From: Antechinus flavipes
Taxonomy: Eukaryota
NCBI RefSeq assembly: GCF_016432865.1
Contig: NC_067404.1
Coordinates: forward strand, 84,940,001 to 85,004,000
Reading direction: 5' to 3'
Length of the DNA: 64,000 nucleotides
Numbering within the stretch: the stretch's first letter is position 1; every line of letters starts with the position of its first letter. Of the stretch, positions 18,935 through 42,620 are shown in pieces. The position numbers and the translations under genes are program-made. The notes under the pieces are model-generated. The model had not been told where the DNA came from, did no database searches, and saw nothing but the letters and a program-made list of their open reading frames with translations.

Positions 18935-19769
18935 TTTCTTTCCATTCCATTCTTTTCTTTTCTGTTCCTTTCCCTTCCTTTCTATTCTATTCCATTCCTT
19001 TCCATTCCATTGATTCCATTCTGTTCTTTTCCATTTCCTTCCGTTCCAGTTTTTTGTGTTCCATTCCATTCTGTTCTTTTCCATTTCCTTCTGTTCCAGT
19101 TTTTTGTGTTCCATTTCATTCCATTCTGTTCCTTTCCATTCCATTTTGTTTTTTCTCATTCCTTTCTGTTCTGTTCTATTCCATTCCTTTCTGTTCCATT
19201 CTTTTTCATTCCATTCCATTCTGGTCCTTTCCATTCCATTCCTTCCCATTCCTTTCTGTTCTATTCCATCCCATTTTCTTCTTTCCCATTCCTTTCTGTT
19301 CTATTCCTTTCCATTTTCTTCTTTCCCATTCCTTTCTGTTCTATTCCATTCCATTTTCTTCTTTCCCATTCCTTTCTGTTCTATTCCATCCCATTTTCTT
19401 CTTTCCCATTCCTTTCTGTTCTGTTCTATTCCATTCCTTTCTGTTCCATTCTTTTTCATTCCATTCCATTCTGTTCCTTTCCATTTCATTCCTTTCTGTT
19501 CTGTTCCATTTTATTCCGTTCTTTTCCATTCCTTTCTGTTCTGTTCTTTTCCTTTCCATTCCATTCCGTTGCTTTTCATTCCATTCCTTTTCATTCTGTT
19601 CCATTCCTTTCTTTTCTTTCCCTTCCTTTCTTTCGATTTGATTCCTTTTCTTCCCATTCCTTTTCTATTGTCCATTCATTTCCTCTCCTCTTTTTCTTTT
19701 CTCCTCTCCTTTCCTTTTTCCTTTCTCCCCTCCTTTTTCCTTTTTCTTCTCTCCTTTTTCCTTTCCTTC
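18935..19769. repeat. Complex pentameric (TTCCA/TTCTG/TTCCT) polypyrimidine microsatellite in MBD1 intron 1
   Basis: Direct reading; 40-bp and ~250-bp internal periodicity. Confidence 0.95.
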
Positions 19770-20611
19770 ACCAAGTACCCTTGGCACACTCATTCCCTAT
19801 TGAGTTTGAGAGGCAGACCTGGGTTTATCCAATGTCTGGACTAGCTGGTCCTTTAGCCTTGAACTACTGCCTTCTTCTTTGGCCTCAGTTTCCCCCATTT
19901 TATACAATTCTCACTGAGACTGTGATTCTAGGCAAGCTGGGTTTGCCTTCCATTCATTGGACCCTTCTCCCAGGAAGATCTTGGTCTTTATTTAAAAGTT
20001 GAAGGTTCGAACAAGCCCCAGCAGGGCTTCTTTGTTAGTTTCTGCATGGGCAGTTGACCACAGGGAACAGAGAAACAGGATGTGGTTGCCCAGGCATCCT
20101 AGTACGGGGGTCTTGGCATGTGGTAAGCAGGACACAGCTTCCCGCTCGGCTCGGTGCAGGAAGTTTGGGGTCCTGCTGGACGTTTCAAAATCTGGGGCCT
20201 CTACAGACTCTTGGTAGTTTCAAAGTCTTGTTAATCCCAACCAGTGGTTGGAGAGCACTCTTCCCTGGGAGGAGACAGGCGTTATCTCATTTGGTAAATA
20301 TCTTGCCATCCCCCTTCTCTGACCACCCAGGTCCCTGATGCTGTGCGGTTCCATCTGCTTTGAGGACAGTAAAGCCCCTTCCTTAGAGAAATGGCCTCTT
20401 GGCGGTTCTTACTGATCAAACCTGCAACTCCACTGCAGGGTGGGGGGGGCAGGCCTATGCCTGGAGTGTGTAGCCTCCGGTTTGCCTCTTCCTTTGGCCT
20501 GCTGACCTGCCCTGCCTGGGCTCCCTGCACCCCACTGACCTGCCCCCCCCCCCTGCAGGCGGCCACCTCTGGCGCCCATCACTCTCTCCCCTCCCCTGAC
20601 CCCCGTCCTCC

Positions 20612-23600
20612 ATGGCTGAGGACTGGCTGGATTGCCCCGTGTTGGGCCCGGGCTGGAAGCGCCGTGAATCCTTCCGGAAATCCGGAGCTACCTGCGGTCG
20701 TTCAGACACCTATTACCAGAGGTAGGCAGGCACCGAGGTCTTGAGGGGGCGCTGCTGGAGGTGGGGAAGGGATTGAAAGCTTTGGGCTGCAGATGATGGT
20801 TCTGGGGAGGTGTGGACAGAGCTTCTCATTTCTGCAGAGGGGGGCACCAACAGTGCTATTGCCCCAGGGGCCCACATGTTGAACCGCCCGGGTGGCACCC
20901 TAGGTGGGTCAGGAACAACTGGGCCTAGTCTGCCAGCCTCTTTCCAGTGAAGTGGCCTCCCAACCCTGGCCTCTCTGTTGGATTGAGGGAGCCGTGGGAA
21001 GAGAAGGGGAAGGAGGGTGGGAATCATTTTTATAGTGCCTACCATGTGCCAGGCCCTGTGCTAAGCACTTTACACATATTTTTTCTCGAATCCTCACGCC
21101 TGCCCCGGGAGGTAGGTGCTGTTGTGCTGCCCGACTTACGGCTGAGGAAAATGAGGCAGACCGGGAAGTGACTTGCCTAGGGCCGCAACAGCCAGCAAGT
21201 GTCCGAGGCCAAATTTGACACGGGCCTTGAGGCCTCTGAGTGAAAACTTTTATTTTATTTGGAGCCCAGCGAGGTCGGAACCCAAGGGAGGGGGCAGTGG
21301 CTACAAAGTGGGCATCTGGGGAGCTGTTGTGTTCTCTGGCCCCGGGCCTGGACTGGGTGTGCTCACGGAAACGGTCTCCACCGGCCTCACCCCCTCTCCC
21401 GGCCCTCCCCCCAATGTAGCCCTACGGGAGAGCGGATTCGGAGTAAGGTTGAGCTGAGGCGCTTCTTGGGCCCTGACTGTGACCTTAGCCGCTTTGACTT
21501 CAAACGGGGTGTCCTCCAGTATTTGCCCGCCAAGGTATGTTGTACTGCGGGAGGCGGGAACGGGATCAAGAAGGTGAGGGCCCTTTTGGAGTCCTGCTCG
21601 TGTTCCACCCTCCCCCCCCCAGGGAGCTTCTCAAAAGAAAAAGAAGAAGAAGAAGAAGAGGAAGAAGAAGAGACGAGTTTGGCCCAAGAAGAAAGAACCG
21701 TCCCTCAAAGAGAAGCAGTCTCTGGGGTCAACCCCCAGATTCTGCCAGCCTCCCCCCCTGGCCACTCTGGCTATGTGAGTGGGAGACCTGCCTGGTTCAT
21801 CCCGCCGGGGAGCTCCCCAGCCCAGAATTCTTCGAATCGCACAGGGATGGGGCTTCTGGGGGGTCGGGGCGGCACCCTGCTCTTTAAGGTTGCTCCCAGT
21901 GCGGGGCCCCTTGGCACCCCCGGGATGGGAAGGGATGAGATCTGTGAGGGAGTCAGTCACCAGTGCCCTTCTTGCCCCCAAATACCCCCCCAGCCTGCTG
22001 TAACTTCTCCTTTGGGGTTCACTGGCCAGGCTCTCCTTCCCCCTTAGAACCTGTGAAAACTGTGGCGCCAGCATCTCAGGGGACGACGCTCGGCGCCAGC
22101 GGCTCCGGACTCTATGTCAAGGCTGCCGAGGTGGGTCTGGGCTGGTGCTGCGCTCCTCTCTCCCCCCACCCCCCTCCCCTTCCCCATCACTGGCTTGTCT
22201 CTAGGAATTGGGGTGGAGTTTGGCTGGGGGCCCTTGTGGCCAGGGATCAGTGTTTTCCTTTCTTCCCCCAGCCCGGAGGAATGCCTTCAACCGGGAGCAG
22301 AGGATGTTCAAGGTACTAGTTCTTGTTGAGCTCCCGGCCCGGGCCCCACCCCTGCCCTCAAGGGGCTGACAGTCTGGGGGGAGTTTGGGGGGGGGGGGTG
22401 ACCCGGGCGTCTCCTTTCTCCTTGGCAGCGAGTAGGCTGTGGTGAGTGCAAGGCCTGCCAGCTGACTGTGGATTGTGGCACGTGCCCCGACTGCACCATG
22501 CGGGTTTCCCGGCCTGGTGCCTCCCAGCTCCCTGGAAGCCAGTGTGCCCAGCGCCGCTGCCTCAAGATTGTGAAGAAAGTGAGTGGGACTCCTGGGGCTG
22601 GACTGGGCCCGGGGCTGGGCCCTCACGATGCTATTTAATGCCCCTTGCTTCCCAGAGTTTTGGCTGCGGTGTCTGTTCTGGCTGTAAAGTCAAGGAGGAC
22701 TGTGGGATCTGCTGCATTTGTGAGCGCCGGGGGAAACCAGACCTCAAGAGGCAATGGAAATGCCTTCAGCGGCGCTGCCTCAAGGTGAACACTCCCAAAG
22801 GTCCTGGGGTCGCGGGCCTGCTTGCATCTTACATGGTTGACAGGTCTTGGAATGGAGCTCAGGTCCAAAAGCTGAACCCCAGGGGCTTCTGCTGCCCAGA
22901 ATGGCTTTACTGAGTCTAAGGCTGGGGAGCTAACTCTTCCCTTAGTGTGGGGGTCGCAAGAAGCCCCAGGTGCCCAAACACTTCATCGCAACTGACAGAG
23001 CCCTTGCCTCCCAGAAGCGCATCAAGAAGAAACCCCGAGGATTGGCCACCAGGAAGCTCCCGGGCAGACGTCCCCGAGTCCTGATGCCGCCGCCCCCCCC
23101 TCAAGCCTACGGCCCTTTCAGCACTACTAAGGTGGGGAGCACTGCAGCTCGGATAAGTGTGGGGAGAGCTGGGGCGGGGCTTCCTGGCCTCTGACCTGGG
23201 TGCAGCAGGCCACGGTCCCCATCTAGTTTTTGTCATTGGTTCCCCCCCTTTTCCCTCCACTCCATCTTCTTCCTCCCTTTTTGCCTCTGCTGTCAGACTG
23301 GGTTAGCAGTGCCAGTGGAGGTACTTGGCTGCTTCCTGGGGGCTTCTTTGTTCCTGAGGGGTTGGGCATCTGCTTTGATATTGAGGGCTTGGAACCTAGG
23401 GAATGGGGGAGGTGAAAAGGGGTGCCCTGAGGCCTTGACTCTCCTAGGCTGGCTTCCAGCTTCCCTTATGCTGTCCTGACTTCGCCACTGAGCACAGTAG
23501 GAAGAAACTTCTGACTAGGAGTGGGGGGCACGGTGCCCACTAGTTTCTTCCTTCTGCTTGTTCTCCCTTTCTCCCTGACCCTGTTGCTGTGCCTCTGACT

Positions 23601-26600
23601 TCTGGCACTGAGGGTTGCATCTGCCTGCCCCCGCCTTTCTATCCTGCATGTCTATAGGGTCTCTTTCCCAGCGTCATCCATAAATGCATGGAGCTTTTGG
23701 GGGTCCTGCTCCTCCACAGGCTCAGTCTGCCCTTGCTCTCTGTTTTTTCCATCAATCCCTTTGGGCCCCATCCTGCCCTGCTCAGGACAGGCCACCTTCA
23801 AAGCTACCCAGGAGCCAAGTTTGATGTCTGATAAGGCTCCCCACAGTGGTGACAGTGAGTGGGGCCTGAGGGTGAGGGCACGCATGGTGCATGTGGGGAC
23901 AGGACTGAGCCAGTCAGTGTGATTCTGCTGCTTCCTTCTTCCTACCTACCCCTGGGGCTGGGCTACCCTACCAAGCTTGTAGCTCCCCAAGCCAGGTCTG
24001 TCTTGTCTGTCATCTGTCTAGCCTAGTGGGTGGGAGGACCTCAAAGCCTGGGAGTAGCCCCTCTGCCTGTTGTGATCTGCCCGCCTGCCTGCCAGCCCCA
24101 GGTTCCAAGCCCCAATGGGGGCCCTGTGGTGCCATCACTTTGTTGTTGGAGAAGGCCTGATTTCCAGGAAGAGGGCGGAGGGCTGAGGGGAAGAGGAGAG
24201 AAGGCAGGAAGGTCTCCAGAGGTTCATCTCTTTCCCTGCCTTTCCTCATCACCCTTCCTCTCCCTTCCTCATCTCCTATGATCCTCTGTCCCCTTCCTCC
24301 CTGGCCTGGCTGGCAGAAGGCCGCTCCTGCGAAGGCCCCCGGGCTGGCAGAGAGGTCCCACTGCGGCAGCTACGGCAGTGAGTGGATTTTAAACTCAGTG
24401 TCTGGCTTGAAAGCTGGGGGCAGTGTCCTCCTGGCCCGGGCGGGAGGGGGCCTTGCCCTGCCCCATCCTGTCTTGTCCCCCCCTGCACGTGAGTGAACCC
24501 TACTCCCTTATTTCATGAAGACCAATCCCATCTCCGTGCTGGGGCCTGCGTGCGTGTGTGCGCGCGTGTGTGTGCATCTGTGTGAGTATAGATATCTCCA
24601 CTTGCTTTGTTCTGATCCCGGCTGTGTCATTTGTCCATCCCGTATTCACAATCACCCCACTATCATATTTTTTTGGGGGGGGATCATTTCTTCCCCATTC
24701 TGTCAGAGCTGTTAGGAGTTGGGGGGAAGTGGGCACTGTGGTGGGAAGATCATAAGAGTCCTGGCTCTGAATGGGCAGATCCTTGGACCTCCTACCCACT
24801 TTGGGTTGTATCATGGCAGGAGGACGGGGACATGTGTGGCTGTGATGCCTTATCCCCCTTCCCCTTTGACAAATGAGGAGCCAGAATCCCAGCTGGAAGG
24901 GGAAGAGAACAGATGCCCGGTAACTGGCACAATAGCACAGGTGTGAGAGAAACCCCATGAGTTTCTCTATCCCGTCCACGCCAGTCTTTCCTGTCTCTCC
25001 CCGCCACAGACACACATGCACACGCACATGGAACATCCCTTGTAGAGAAAGGGAAACATTTGGACCCGTTCCTGGAATACTTCTAAGAAGGCTGATAAAG
25101 CACAGTTCTGGGCCACTCTTGCACCCAAGGGTGTCCCTAGCAGGAATGTGCTCTGTCTTTGGTGGTCAAGCTTGGCCCGGCCCAAGATTTTGCTGCCCTT
25201 AGATCCCATCCCCAGAGCCAGGACTGTGATTTCCTGTTAGAGGACTGTTGTCCTCCAGTCCCACAGAAATGGAAGTTGCTTCTGGAACCCGGCAGAGTGA
25301 GTGAGATAAAAGGGGTATGCCACCTATCGGCCGTGGTGCACAAGCAGGCGTTTACATGCAGCTCGTGGAAGGAGCCCCTTTTGCTCAGGTCATCCGGTCA
25401 CTTTGCAGGGAGAGAGCAGGAGGGGGTAGAATTTGAGGGTCTAGCTGCCAGCCGCTCCTTCACCAGCTTGTTCGTTCCCTTCCCCATCCTTGCAGCTCGA
25501 CGTTGGTTATAAGGCCAAAGAGCCAAATTGGGGCCAGAGCTGCCCTGCACCTTCCAAGCTGGTAAGGCCCTGACTTGGCCATGGGGCTACTGGGTAGGCT
25601 GGGCCTTGCTTGGAGTTGGGGGTTTGCTTGTAAACACAGAGGGATGACGTGAGGGGAAAGGCTTGGTGCGTTGGACTCAGGCTGGGGTCTTGGCACCTGG
25701 CCCGAAAACCTCCCAGGGAACCCTTGCACTTGGGCCGCTGGCCCCTCCCCCTCCCACCTGTTCTTCTTGCAGTTGCCTGTGGTCCCTGCCTTCTTCTCCA
25801 AGAACTTTCTGTATTACTGTGTAGGCTCTGATTTTCTAGTGAGTGTCCAAGTCTCTTTTTCCCCTCCCCCTTGGCCCACTTGGCCACCGTGATCCCCAGT
25901 GGCTAATAAATTAGTAGCTCTGCTCCCCCTCTCCCAAGCTGGGTGCTTGATAGGAAGGTTCTCCTCGGCTCTTTGACCCTTCTGGTGCTAGTTTGGAGGC
26001 CCTTCCTACCACGCCCCCCTGCCCGATTCCTGTCCCAAGGTGTGCGGTCAAGGGGCCACCCAGTCCAGGGCTTTATGCCAGAGGTTTGTCCTGGGGGCCA
26101 GTAGAATTGTGAAAGGCTGGCTTGGGGTTGTGATGCTCAAGGAAGCTTCCTACAGCAGACATGGGATCACCCAGGGGGCCAAGGTAAAGAGTCGGTTTGG
26201 ACACGTCTGTCCGAAGAGCCGTCTAGAAGCCCCTACTGTCCCACTGTTCGCCAGCCTGCCTCCAGGGGGGCTGCCGTCCTGCCCCAGCGGGAGCGCTGGC
26301 AGCCCAGGTGATCTTGTCTCTCTCGCCTGCCGCCCAGCACTACTCTAGTCACCGGCAGAGCCGCAAATGTGGGGTGTGTGCGGCATGCCGGCGCCGCGTG
26401 GACTGTGGCCAGTGCGACTTCTGCCAGGACAAGCCCAAATTTGGGGGCTGTAACCAGAAGCGCCAGAAGTGCCGATGGAGGCAGTGCCTGCAGTTTGCCA
26501 TGGTGGGTGTGGCAGCTGGCTCTGGGGAGGTCCTGGGTAGGCAGTGGCTCATTAAGGTGCTCAGCCAAGTGTCTGCCTACAGAAACATCTGCTGCCTACA

Positions 26601-28624
26601 GCCAGGTGGGACAGCCCTGCTGTAGAGGGGGCAGCTCTGCCTCTGTGCCGGCCACGCCGTAGGAAGGGTGCCTTGGTTAAGCGGGCCAAATCTGGGGGCC
26701 TCCAGGGCCAGAGGCTGGTCACTGAGGCCCTCAGCAGTGGGCTTGAGGTAACCCTAATTCCCCATGGCTCCCATCCCTCCCTCCCTCCCACCCTGGGATC
26801 CTGAGCTGGACCCGACCCCTGCACGGCAGCTTTGGAAGCATTGCTGCCTTCCTCTGATCTCCTTAGCTTCAGTCCTGTGTACCCTGCGCCCTTGGAGGCC
26901 ATCACCCCTTTTACTCATGCTAACCCAAGCTCCGTGCTTCCTCAGCAGAAGGGGGTTCCTGTGATGATGGAGGAGTTTGATCCTGGCTTTGCAGTGCCCC
27001 CGGGGACCGACCTCGTCATCCTACAGGAGCAGGAGGGGCGTGAGAGCGTCCCTGTACTCGTGCCCGGTACCAAGCCACGAGGCTCCAGGTTCTCCACTCC
27101 CAGCTGCATCGTCATAGAGGTGAGCACTGGTTGACAGGCCCAGGCTCCCTGGCTCCTTTCATTGCCTCCTTGGCGTGTAAGCCAGTAATCACTTTGTCAG
27201 AGGGCCGATGGAGCCGAGTCCCCCTGTGGACTGGACTGAGATTGGCTTGACTTGGAGGGATGCCGTTCAATGCTAACGGTAATCTTGGAGAAGTGTGGCT
27301 TAGGAGCTGGCGTCCAGGAAGCAAAGCTTTGGAGGGGCCCACTGTGATGGAAGTAGAGGGTAGAAGTCTCTTGTCACTTTGGGGAACCAGCCTGTGGGGG
27401 CCTTGTGCCGGTCTCTTGGCCAGAGGCCCTTAAGGCTTCGTCTTCGGTTTTCCCTGCAGGAGTTTGCGTGTCCAAATTTTGGGGTGTTCGTCTCAACCCC
27501 CCCGATAAAGCAGGAGGTTGAGAGTTATGGGGACCAAGCTTTTGGACCTGTCTTTCCTCCCCCTTCAGACTTCTCTCCTGGCCTCCCCGTTACCTTGGTA
27601 ACTTGATCTCCCATGGTCCTCCCCAAATATCACCCTCTGCTGCCACTCAAGGCTTGACTCCCATGTGCAAACGCTGCTTGATGCCCTTCCTGTTTCTTGG
27701 ATGGAAGTTTGAAAGTCGCTTCTGTGCCATGATGCCTTTGTGGGTCTTGCTAACTGTTATGGAAGACACAGAATTCTGCCTTGGTCTGGCTCCGAATCTC
27801 CAGCCTGGAAAACTCCTGGAAGAGGGGGCGGGAGGGGAAAATCGTGCCGCTATCTTCCCCAGACCTGGCCCACTTCGTGTCAGTTTTTCGAGCATAATAG
27901 GTCATTTACTAGTGGTTTGTGGTTTTTTTTTAGGATGTTGATAGGGCTCAGCTACCACTTTCTGTGAAACAAGAGGAAACCTGGGGCGAGGAAGAGGAAG
28001 AAGAGGAGGAGGAGGAGGAGGAAGAGGAGGAGGAGGATGCAAAAGCAGACACTCCTGTGGTGAGTGACTGAGGGCTAGCCTTGGGTGGCCCATAAGGAGG
28101 GAGGAAGTGAATGAATGGCAGCTGGGGAGTCGTAATTGGAGTTTTTCCTCCAGATCATGGAGATTTATAGCCTGAGTGGAGCCGCCCCGACAAGAGCTGG
28201 GTCCTGTGGTGTCCTGGACAGTGTCCTCCAGGAGTTTCTAGCAGAGCTGAATGAGCTGCCCTTGCCTGCCCATTGGGAGGTCCTGCCACCAAGGGGGCCT
28301 GACCTGTGCATCACCCAGCGTTCCCCCTTGTCTACCATGGCCTCTGCCGTTATCCATATCCAGCCAGGCCTTTACTTTCACGTAGTGGTACAAGATGTCC
28401 CTGTTCCGGCCAACCATGAGCTCTATACAGCTCACCCATTGCGGCTCACCACTGTGGATGAGGTGGTAGAGCTCATCTGCAACCTGGAGGCCTACCATGT
28501 GTGCCCTGGCTTCCCTGGCATTGAGAGGCAGGGCTCCCGTTCTCCAGACTGTGATGTCCTAGTGTATGAGGGGCGCTGCCAGGCCTGCTGTGTACCACCC
28601 CGCCCCCTCAAAGAGTGGCAGTAA
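20612..28624 (+). CDS. MBD1: Methyl-CpG-binding domain protein 1: MBD, three CXXC fingers, TRD, extended C-terminal domain; 733 aa
   Basis: Exons 20612-20721, 21420-21534, 21623-21774, 22048-22130, 22272-22312, 22429-22578, 22656-22784, 23015-23131, 25773-25838, 26338-26502, 26583-26747, 26946-27119, 27460-27597, 27934-28059, 28154-28624; phases consistent (2202 nt). MAEDWLDCPVLGPGWKRRESFRKSGATCGRSDTYYQSPTGERIRSKVEL (MBD) and RKCGVCAACRRRVDCGQCDFCQDKPKFGG (CXXC3) match MBD1. Confidence 0.95.
21020..21245 (-). mobile_element. MIR-type CORE-SINE in MBD1 intron
   Basis: Antisense CORE motifs (GAGGAAAATGAGGCAGA, AAGTGACTTGCCTAGGG, AAATTTGA). Confidence 0.6.
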
Positions 28625-28649
28625 GCCACCTTGTCCTGGGTCCCCATGC

Positions 28650-29168
28650 ATTAAACTGGCGTGTGGGGCCCTTTTCCCCCAGTTCTCCCCTACTACCCTT
28701 TGAAGGAGTCAGTCTACACTGGAAAGGCTTGAGGTGAGGACGGATGCCCTTCCCCTCCTTCCCCCCCTCCCCACAGAAACCAGCATTCACCATCTCCCAT
28801 TGGACTGCTCTCAGAGCATTTCCACCCTTCTGGCCTGCCTCAGCCCTCTGTGGCTCCCAAAAGAACCACCACTGTCCCTGTCCCTGTTGGCACCCCTCCC
28901 ACACATACATATTCAAGCTCACCTCAGGGATATGGGCTGGGCCCATGTATAGAAGTGTGAGGGGCCTGGATGCTTGGATTTGTCCTGGAAGTGGAGCCCC
29001 TAGGGAGGGGCACCTGCAGGGCCAAAGGGCCACTCCTTTCTCTGCTATGCCCCCCTGAAACACACACAGAGATCCCTGAAGCAAAAGGAACTTTATTGGT
29101 TTTATGTACCCCAGTGGCCTGCTTAGCTGGTCTGTATTTGTTGCCTTACCTTTATTTTTCTAAATAAA
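28650..29168 (+). terminator. Two MBD1 poly(A) signals (ATTAAA 28650-28655; AATAAA 29163-29168)
   Basis: Direct reading; consistent with proximal and distal 3' ends. Confidence 0.6.

Positions 29169-34855: not shown

Positions 34856-42620
<7,765 letters not shown>

What the first reader, a model, noticed from the sequence alone, without database searches (positions are those of the whole stretch)
28154..28624. 156-aa Cys-rich C-terminal domain on marsupial MBD1
Seen: after the TRD core IMEIYSLSG (human ITEIFSLGG) the exon stays open with a globular-looking sequence (LQEFLAELNELPLPAHWEV...VIHIQPGLYFHVVVQDVPVP...VDEVVELICNLE). It ends in HVCPG-x11-DCDVLVYEGRCQACC, a plausible C4 zinc site. Established: human and mouse MBD1 end shortly after the TRD core in short, variable tails. 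Inference: an ancestral or marsupial-specific folded module, possibly related to Cys-rich regions preceding P-element/THAP-type transposases, that could change what MBD1 recruits to methylated DNA.
Basis: partly seen in the sequence, partly recalled or inferred. Interest (0 to 1): 0.7.

Follow-up and report, generated by a model that had tools for sequence, protein, structure and literature searches.

The report
Ancestral folded tail domain of MBD1
The last exon of this marsupial's MBD1 gene encodes a real, well-folded ~130-residue zinc-binding domain that jawed vertebrates from sharks to marsupials have kept, that no domain library names, and that was absent from every placental MBD1 examined, so the disordered tail studied in human MBD1 is the derived state.

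Summary
Window 28154-28624 (+) is the terminal coding exon of MBD1, the gene just downstream of CXXC1. It has an AG acceptor, 156 codons and a TAA stop.

- **Not marsupial-specific.** phmmer found 107 representative clusters, all with the domain at or near the C-terminus of MBD+CXXC proteins. Named hits span sharks, ray-finned fish, coelacanth, lungfish, amphibians, lizards, turtles, alligator and more than 10 marsupials.
- **Under selection.** dN/dS among six marsupials is 0.06-0.14 in the folded core.
- **Zinc site.** Four Cys (117, 133, 142, 145) and His88 are conserved in 67-68 of 68 sequences.
- **Fold.** AlphaFold2 with the alignment gives a confident model (pLDDT 86.5): a helix, four strands and two helices, like RWD/UEV/UBC domains, capped by the four-Cys tail.
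- **No name.** Pfam and PDB sequence searches find nothing.
- **Absent from placentals examined.** None of 89 non-human placental MBD1 isoform clusters has the domain. A lemur locus shows no relic.
- **Expressed in the ancestor.** An intronless marsupial MBD1 retrogene carries the domain, so the spliced domain-bearing mRNA existed.
- **THAP/P-element idea.** The nearest non-MBD1 shapes are THAP and P-element-type proteins (TM 0.49-0.63). No sequence search supports this.
- **Function.** Most likely a protein-docking module beside the corepressor-binding motif. This is inferred, not shown.

The parts
27934..28059 (+). Penultimate MBD1 exon (acidic part of the TRD, ...EEEEEDAKADTPV). The GT donor is at 28060-28061.
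   Evidence: sequence. tblastn of Sarcophilus MBD1 P0388 aa 445-501.
28154..28624 (+). Terminal coding exon: 156 codons plus a TAA stop at 28622-28624. The AG acceptor is at 28152-28153.
   Evidence: 95% identical to Sarcophilus and Sminthopsis MBD1 C-termini.
28154..28180 (+). TRD hydrophobic core IMEIYSLSG (residues 1-9). It matches placental ITEIFSLGG, whose Ile and Leu are the human I576/L579 needed for MCAF1 and HDAC3 binding.
   Evidence: placental tails; PMC4014985. In A1, position 4 is Ile in 51/68 and position 7 is Leu in 63/68.
28181..28210 (+). Variable linker, residues 10-19, modelled with low confidence.
   Evidence: pLDDT below 50 for residues 7-16. Gappy, unconserved columns in A1.
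28211..28495 (+). Alpha/beta core, residues 20-114: helix 23-33, strands 41-43, 51-55, 65-69 and 74-79, helices 89-92 and 101-112. The topology resembles RWD/UEV/UBC domains. Invariant residues are L25, P38, W41, Q55 and H88 (codon 28415-28417).
28496..28597 (+). Cys-rich cap, residues 115-148. The putative zinc ligands are C117 (28502-28504), C133 (28550-28552), C142 (28577-28579) and C145 (28586-28588).
   Evidence: C117, C142 and C145 are in 68/68 sequences and C133 in 67/68. pLDDT is 88-95 for residues 131-150.
28598..28621 (+). Unconserved last 8 residues.
28625..28795 (+). 3' UTR, running at least this far. ATTAAA lies at 28650 and AATAAA at 29163.
   Evidence: Retrogene L007 5484-5565 aligns to window 28708-28795. 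Poly(A)-like hexamers.
20584..26493 (+). Upstream MBD1 coding exons: MBD at about 20612-20740 and 21418-21756; CXXC fingers at about 22423-22587, 22638-22805 and 26353-26493.

Best explanation
**What it is.** Window 28154-28624 is the constitutive last exon of the marsupial MBD1 gene. It encodes the hydrophobic core of the repression domain (IMEIYSL), a short flexible linker, and then a compact domain of about 130 residues.

**The domain.** It is an alpha/beta sandwich with the topology of RWD/UEV/UBC domains, closed by a tail in which four conserved cysteines most likely hold one zinc ion.

**Its history.** The domain belongs to the ancestral MBD1 of jawed vertebrates. Marsupials, reptiles, amphibians and fishes kept it. 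In the placentals examined it is gone, and short disordered tails follow the same motif instead.

**Likely role (inferred).** RWD/UEV-type domains without a catalytic cysteine are protein-docking platforms. This one sits about 12 residues from the motif that binds ATF7IP/MCAF1 and HDAC3 in human MBD1. I therefore think it is a protein-protein interaction module that works with that motif to hold a corepressor, or a second MBD1, on methylated DNA.

**Shown:** exon, conservation, purifying selection, confident fold, absence from the placental proteins sampled and one lemur locus. **Inferred:** zinc binding and the docking function.

**Confidence.** About 0.9 for the structural and evolutionary part and about 0.4 for the docking function; the single figure given is a blend of the two.
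For: - **Exon and splice sites:**
- **Distribution:** 107 representative clusters, 90 below 1e-10, all ten tested carrying CXXC and seven also MBD. Named species run from sharks to marsupials.
- **Selection:** dN/dS is 0.06-0.14 in the core among six marsupials with dS up to 0.9.
- **Conserved residues:** L25, P38, W41, Q55, H88, C117, C142 and C145 are invariant; C133 is in 67/68.
- **Fold:** AF2 pLDDT 86.5, pTM 0.78. The structure search without Foldseek gives a list dominated by RWD/UEV/UBC domains, such as the LTN1, Knl1 and RNF25 RWD domains, Mms2, FANCL and E2 enzymes, at Z 5-6.3 over residues 20-114.
- **Constitutive in marsupials:** 67 of 69 marsupial isoform models carry it, and the two without are truncated models.
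- **Expressed in the ancestor:** an intronless retrogene (L007) carries the fused exons including this one.
- **Absent from placentals examined:** 0 of 89 isoform clusters hit the A1 profile. In a lemur locus, homology stops about 30 nt into the exon.
- **Neighbouring motif:** the human MBD1 C-terminus is disordered, and I576/L579 bind MCAF1 and HDAC3 (PMC4014985).
Against:
- The fold matches are middling (Z at most 6.3, below the tool's caution line of 8), and Foldseek on PDB found nothing. 'RWD/UEV-like' is therefore a topology, not a membership.
- The zinc site rests on conservation only. I could not read the model's coordinates.
- The model does not dock the TRD core onto the domain (pLDDT about 51 for residues 1-10), so cooperation with the motif is conjecture.
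- Only one placental genome was inspected at the DNA level.
- Monotremes and birds were not tested.
Confidence: 0.55

Rival explanations
1. The module shares ancestry with an accessory domain found in THAP proteins and P-element-type (THAP9-like) transposases. On this reading the MBD1 tail is a captured transposase-type module, or transposons captured a host one. It would act as in transposases, most likely as an oligomerisation or assembly domain that makes MBD1 bivalent on methylated DNA.
For: - In the ESM Atlas shape search, the best non-MBD1 matches are THAP-only arthropod proteins (TM 0.63, 128 residues, rmsd 3.5, query 23-152).
- Next come TNP-like RNase H transposases of echinoderms (TM 0.57, 120 residues) and two clusters with THAP and/or Tnp_P_element (TM 0.49 and 0.48).
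- The THAP and TNP-like matches (the first three clusters) run through the Cys-rich tail to residues 152-153; the 0.48 cluster stops at 128, and the solved RWD/UBC matches mostly end at residue 114.
- The whole module plus the TRD core sits in one exon, as expected for capture of an intronless ORF.
Against: - No sequence evidence: phmmer over 1.84 billion proteins returned only MBD1-type proteins.
- Pfam at E up to 10 on 68 members gave no THAP or Tnp family.
- The A1 profile against PDB sequences gave nothing.
- The profile search of the protein collection covered only 86-273 aa proteins and returned mostly MBD1-type fragments, none placental and none with a THAP or other Pfam domain.
- No P-element transposase or THAP entry was among the 50 best rows of the structure search of 48,161 solved-chain representatives.
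- Both sides of the Atlas match are predictions, and I could not see which part of the target aligns.
- The direction of any transfer is unknown.
Confidence: 0.3
2. The module is a ubiquitin- or SUMO-pathway adaptor. Like UEV domains (which bind ubiquitin) or the RWD protein RSUME (which binds Ubc9; recalled from memory), it would bind Ubc9, SUMO or ubiquitin. It would then promote SUMO-dependent recruitment of ATF7IP-SETDB1 to MBD1.
For: The fold list is rich in E2, UEV and RWD domains. Dependence of MBD1 on sumoylation for MCAF1 binding is touched on in PMC4014985. The remainder is my own knowledge, not tested here.
Against: - There is no catalytic cysteine: C109 is Leu in teleosts.
- The HP at residues 94-95 is not followed by an E2-type active site.
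- Z scores are modest.
- No partner was tested.
Confidence: 0.12
3. The zinc-bearing module binds nucleic acid and gives MBD1 a further DNA or RNA contact beside the MBD and CXXC3.
For: It has four conserved Cys, it sits in a protein with three other zinc fingers, and the MotA C-terminal DNA-binding domain appears among the fold matches at Z 5.5-5.9.
Against: No basic patch is evident in the conserved positions, which are mostly hydrophobic plus Q, S, H and Y. Most fold relatives are protein binders.
Confidence: 0.08
4. The frame is an accidental read-through of a GC-rich 3' region and has no function.
For: None beyond the region's G+C content of 52-58%.
Against: Conservation from sharks to marsupials, dN/dS of about 0.1, a confident fold, and retention in an old retrogene.
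Confidence: 0.01

Closest known systems
Human and other placental MBD1 C-terminus (TRD A529-P592 plus short tails)
   Same: Same gene, next to CXXC1. Same acidic stretch and the same hydrophobic core (ITEIFSL versus IMEIYSL) at the start of the same exon.
   Different: Placental proteins continue GGTRFRDTAVWLP and then tails, 30-89 aa in all after ITEIFSL, which are disordered by NMR (PMC4014985). R583 and R585, needed for MCAF1 binding, lie in this placental-only stretch. The marsupial and ancestral protein continues into a 130-residue folded zinc domain.
RWD / UEV / UBC-fold domains (LTN1, Knl1 and RNF25 RWD; Mms2 and Tsg101 UEV; E2 enzymes)
   Same: Predicted helix, four antiparallel strands, then helices over residues 20-114. 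These folds fill the structure-search list at Z 4.4-6.3 and appear in Foldseek's weak rows.
   Different: No catalytic Cys and no E2 active site. An added four-Cys cap is absent from those domains. Z is below 8, sequence identity is 4-16%, and there is no Pfam RWD or UQ_con hit.
Unnamed region of THAP proteins and P-element-type (TNP-like/THAP9-like) transposases
   Same: The best non-MBD1 predicted-structure neighbours (TM 0.63, 0.57 and 0.49); these three matches run to residues 152-153 and so include the Cys-rich tail.
   Different: MBD1 has no THAP finger and no RNase H core. No sequence-level similarity was detected.
CXXC zinc fingers of MBD1 itself
   Same: Cysteine-ligated zinc modules in the same protein.
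   Different: CXXC fingers bind two zinc ions with eight Cys in a 45-residue crescent and hit PF02008. This tail has four conserved Cys spaced 16, 9 and 3 residues apart, does not hit PF02008, and is appended to an alpha/beta domain.

Membership tests
MBD1 orthologue | N-terminal MBD plus CXXC fingers | tested here: met
   Window exons match Sarcophilus MBD1 P0388 along its length. Relatives carry PF01429 and PF02008.
MBD1 orthologue | Position immediately downstream of CXXC1 | tested here: met
   CXXC1 PHD and CXXC exons lie at 10.7-16.2 kb on the + strand. The order is the same in lemur L001 and opossum L004.
MBD1 orthologue | TRD hydrophobic core I-x-E-I-[FY]-S-L | tested here: met
   IMEIYSL at 28154-28174; ITEIFSL in 87 of 89 placental clusters.
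RWD/UEV/UBC superfold | Alpha, four-stranded antiparallel sheet, alpha topology with a significant structural match | tested here: inconclusive
   The topology is present in the model. The best Z is 6.3 and the list is dominated by this superfold, but Z stays below the tool's caution line of 8. Foldseek E-values are all 0.4 or higher.
E2 ubiquitin-conjugating enzymes | Catalytic Cys about 8-10 residues after an HPN motif | tested here: not met
   No conserved Cys lies in the core. C109 is replaced by Leu in teleosts, and the invariant Cys are all in the tail.
THAP / P-element-type transposase accessory domain | Detectable sequence or profile similarity | tested here: not met
   phmmer, Pfam at E up to 10, and the A1 profile against PDB sequences found nothing. 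The A1 profile search of the protein collection also found nothing, but covered only 86-273 aa proteins.
THAP / P-element-type transposase accessory domain | Shared three-dimensional fold including the Cys-rich tail | tested here: inconclusive
   Atlas TM 0.63, 0.57, 0.49 and 0.48 to four clusters with THAP, Tnp_P_element or TNP-like families, three of them spanning query residues 23/24 to 152/153 and the 0.48 cluster only 23-128. These are predictions on both sides, and the target ranges are not given.
Cys4 zinc site | Four conserved ligand residues | tested here: met
   C117, C142 and C145 in 68/68 sequences and C133 in 67/68. The second Cys of the 'ACC' triplet (position 146) is not conserved.
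Cys4 zinc site | Tetrahedral geometry and bound metal | not testable with these tools
   Model coordinates are not readable here. Metal analysis of the purified domain is needed.

The most novel reading that the evidence does not exclude
The C-terminal module of ancestral MBD1, possibly together with the adjoining TRD core that recruits ATF7IP-SETDB1, shares its origin with an accessory domain of THAP/P-element-type transposases. A central reader of DNA methylation would then be partly a transposon-host chimera dating to the stem of jawed vertebrates. Placentals would later have discarded the folded part and kept only a disordered motif.
Probability: 0.3. Interest if true: 0.75.

Novelty: new variant of a known kind. 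Interest (0 to 1): 0.6.

Why it matters
Nearly all mechanistic work on MBD1 uses the human or mouse protein, whose C-terminus is an intrinsically disordered repression domain. This analysis shows that condition is derived. The MBD1 of jawed vertebrates ended in a structured zinc domain that is still under strong constraint in marsupials, reptiles, amphibians and fishes, and no domain library names it.

This opens three directly testable questions:
- What does the domain bind?
- Why could placentals do without it?
- Did the placental-only residues R583 and R585 take over its role in ATF7IP/MCAF1 binding?

It also bears on how zebrafish, Xenopus and opossum MBD1 experiments should be read against mammalian ones. 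Finally, it offers a possible, still unproven, link between a methyl-CpG reader and transposase-type modules.

Tried and rejected
- **Pfam:** nothing relevant on the exon, on 68 family members at E up to 10, or beyond MBD and CXXC in ten full-length relatives.
- **PDB sequence search:** 0 hits with the single sequence and with the A1 profile.
- **AF2 on the single sequence:** useless, pLDDT 33. Only the run with the alignment worked.
- **Foldseek against PDB:** no match at E 0.001 or better.
- **Atlas feature searches:** no usable hit.
- **Profile search for short stand-alone copies (86-273 aa):** mostly MBD1-type fragments from fish, a frog and Sminthopsis plus unnamed Logan fragments; none placental and none carrying a THAP or other Pfam domain.
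- **Relic in a placental:** tblastn, six-frame hmmsearch with --max, and blastn at word size 7 on the lemur locus found only the first ~30 nt of the exon.
- **Placental tail exons in the window:** none found.
- **More placental loci:** pig, hyena and snow leopard look-ups failed because those isoforms are not the recorded products.
- **E2 enzyme idea:** rejected, because there is no conserved catalytic Cys.
- **Literature:** five searches found no paper describing this domain.
- Only the terminal exon was searched, by reference, and full-length comparisons used database proteins. Human MBD1 proteins returned were left out of the local analysis, and no human contig was fetched.

Full report
**1.
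- Window 28154-28624 (+) follows a polypyrimidine tract and an AG at 28152-28153. It stays open for 156 codons and ends in TAA at 28622-28624. Every quoted peptide is there. The only slip is that 12, not 11, residues separate HVCPG from DCDV.
- The upstream exon is 27934-28059 (...EEEDAKADTPV, GTGAGT donor at 28060) and joins in phase 0.
- tblastn of the Sarcophilus MBD1 protein P0388 maps thirteen colinear segments from 20612 to 28618, with aa 499-654 on this exon at 95% identity.
- CXXC1 (PHD, CXXC and C-terminal exons) lies at about 10.7-16.2 kb on the same strand. A class-C GPCR exon lies at 35273-36151, matching the gene order in the Sminthopsis and opossum loci.
- The gene is therefore the positional MBD1 of a dasyurid marsupial. 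dS is 0.14 to Sarcophilus and 0.23 to Sminthopsis.

**2. It is a conserved domain, not a read-through.**
- phmmer of the 156 aa against 1.84 billion representatives gave 107 hits: 90 below 1e-10 and 20 below 1e-30.
- The match is at or near the C-terminus in all but a few models (one, a conger gene model, looks fused). Ten tested relatives carry CXXC, seven of them also MBD, and nothing else from Pfam.
- Named members include many marsupials, lizards, snakes, turtles, alligator, caecilian, newt, frogs, lungfish, coelacanth, Polypterus and teleost mbd1a, and sharks.
- A 68-sequence alignment (A1) has invariant L25, P38, W41, Q55, H88, C117, C142 and C145. C133 is present in 67/68.
- Among six marsupial orthologues, Nei-Gojobori dN/dS is 0.09-0.22 for the exon and 0.06-0.14 for residues 20-148, with dS up to 0.95.
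- 67 of 69 marsupial isoform models carry the domain. The two exceptions are truncated models.

**3. Indirect proof of expression.**
- Marsupials have a second MBD1 lineage, annotated 'MBD1-like', that is present from opossum to Australian species.
- The Antechinus copy (L007) is a single uninterrupted 792-codon ORF.
- It aligns colinearly with window exons 20584-20721, 22662-22745, 26358-26486 and 28153-28590, and with the 3' UTR at 28708-28795, with the introns missing.
- It is therefore a processed retrogene. Its existence shows that the spliced mRNA of the marsupial ancestor already joined the TRD exon to this exon.

**4. Fold.**
- AlphaFold2 on the single sequence failed (pLDDT 33).
- With A1 it gave pLDDT 86.5 and pTM 0.78, with 109 residues above 90.
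- Residues 1-19 (TRD core and linker) are not ordered.
- Residues 20-114 form a helix, four strands and two helices.
- Residues 115-148 form a loop, a short paired strand and a helix that starts at the C142-x-x-C145 pair.
- Foldseek on PDB found nothing significant.
- The search of 48,161 solved chains gave a best Z of 6.3. The list is dominated by RWD, UEV and UBC domains, including LTN1, Knl1, RNF25, Mms2, FANCL, BRISC subunits and many E2 enzymes, over residues 20-114.
- This is a consistent topology, but it falls below the tool's level for trust.
- There is no E2 active site: C109 is Leu in teleosts.

**5. The THAP/P-element lead.**
- In the ESM Atlas shape search, the first two rows are MBD1 clusters (TM 0.76).
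- After them come THAP-only arthropod proteins (TM 0.63, 128 residues, query 23-152), a THAP/Tnp_P_element cluster (0.49), TNP-like RNase H transposases of echinoderms (0.57) and another Tnp_P_element cluster (0.48). All rank at or above a UBC cluster (0.45).
- The first three run on to residues 152-153 and so include the Cys-rich tail; the 0.48 cluster stops at residue 128. This is why I take the lead seriously.
- No sequence method supports it, and I could not obtain those proteins for a profile-profile test.
- I rate shared ancestry at about 0.3.

**6. Placentals.**
- 89 non-human placental MBD1 isoform clusters were examined, from primates, colugo, carnivores, pig, peccary, moles, hedgehog and rodents.
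- None hits the A1 profile at E up to 10.
- All but two continue from ITEIFSL as GG[TC]...; most read GGTRFRDTAVWLP. The tails total 30-89 aa after ITEIFSL, most often 33, 65 or 83.
- In the lemur locus L001 (CXXC1, MBD1, then a TPH-domain gene), homology to the marsupial exon ends about 30 nt after the acceptor. Six-frame HMM, tblastn and blastn find no relic.
- The placental tail exons have no counterpart in the window.
- A quick tree groups placental MBD1, the marsupial positional gene and the marsupial retrogene lineage as three well-supported clades within mammals, with their order unresolved.
- NMR work shows the human C-terminus (D507-Q605) is disordered. It binds MCAF1 and HDAC3 through T574-S594, with I576/L579 and R583/R585 required (PMC4014985).
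- The first pair is conserved in the window (I4, L7). The second pair lies in the placental-only replacement.

**7. Reading.**
- Shown: a constitutive, selected, folded, probably zinc-binding C-terminal domain of ancestral MBD1, kept in marsupials and absent from the placentals examined.
- Inferred: it is a docking module acting with the adjacent corepressor-binding motif.
- Alternatives are an oligomerisation module of transposase type, a SUMO/ubiquitin-pathway adaptor, or a nucleic-acid binder.
- The sequences sit in public gene models. However, Pfam (2025 copy) has no family for the domain, and five literature searches found no description.

**Limits.**
- Monotremes, birds and jawless fish were not tested.
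- Only one placental genome was read.
- Zinc geometry was not measured.
- Human proteins and contigs were left aside.

Noticed in passing
L007:3001-5379 (Antechinus flavipes, another chromosome); proteins P0003, P0127-P0131, P0004, P0133: Marsupials carry an intact, intronless MBD1 retrogene, annotated 'MBD1-like' (749-1048 aa). It is present from opossum to koala and its C-terminal domain is 89-98% conserved among them. It looks like an old, selected retrocopy of a methyl-CpG reader.
   Followed up: partly
Proteins P0157, P0173, P0005, P0150, P0151 (Gracilinanus, Monodelphis, Dromiciops): Further MBD1-like copies on other chromosomes in didelphids and Dromiciops fall inside the positional-gene clade in the quick tree. 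This suggests extra lineage-specific duplications.
   Followed up: partly
L002:3658-11593 (Sminthopsis crassicaudata): The public annotation splits MBD1 into two gene models. One is a 528-aa protein that reads into the intron after CXXC3. The other is an 'uncharacterized LOC141548539' (238 or 281 aa) holding the TRD and this domain.
   Followed up: partly
window:18938-19638 and 19690-19768: A T/C-rich tandem repeat (TTCCA-like, periods 40, 50, 55 and 120 bp, 66-76% matches) lies between CXXC1 and MBD1. It produces long spurious ORFs in all three + frames.
   Followed up: partly
window:35273-36151 (+); L002, L004: Downstream of marsupial MBD1 lie an ESF2_C-domain gene on the minus strand and a class-C GPCR (ANF_receptor). 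In the lemur the next gene is a TPH-domain gene instead, so synteny breaks right after MBD1 between marsupials and that placental.
   Followed up: partly
window:53590-63252: Earlier notes of this scan report a 9-kb 32-36-bp repeat array and a putative minus-strand lncRNA here. The strong positive AT skew at 54-62 kb fits a repeat array. I did not examine it.
   Followed up: no
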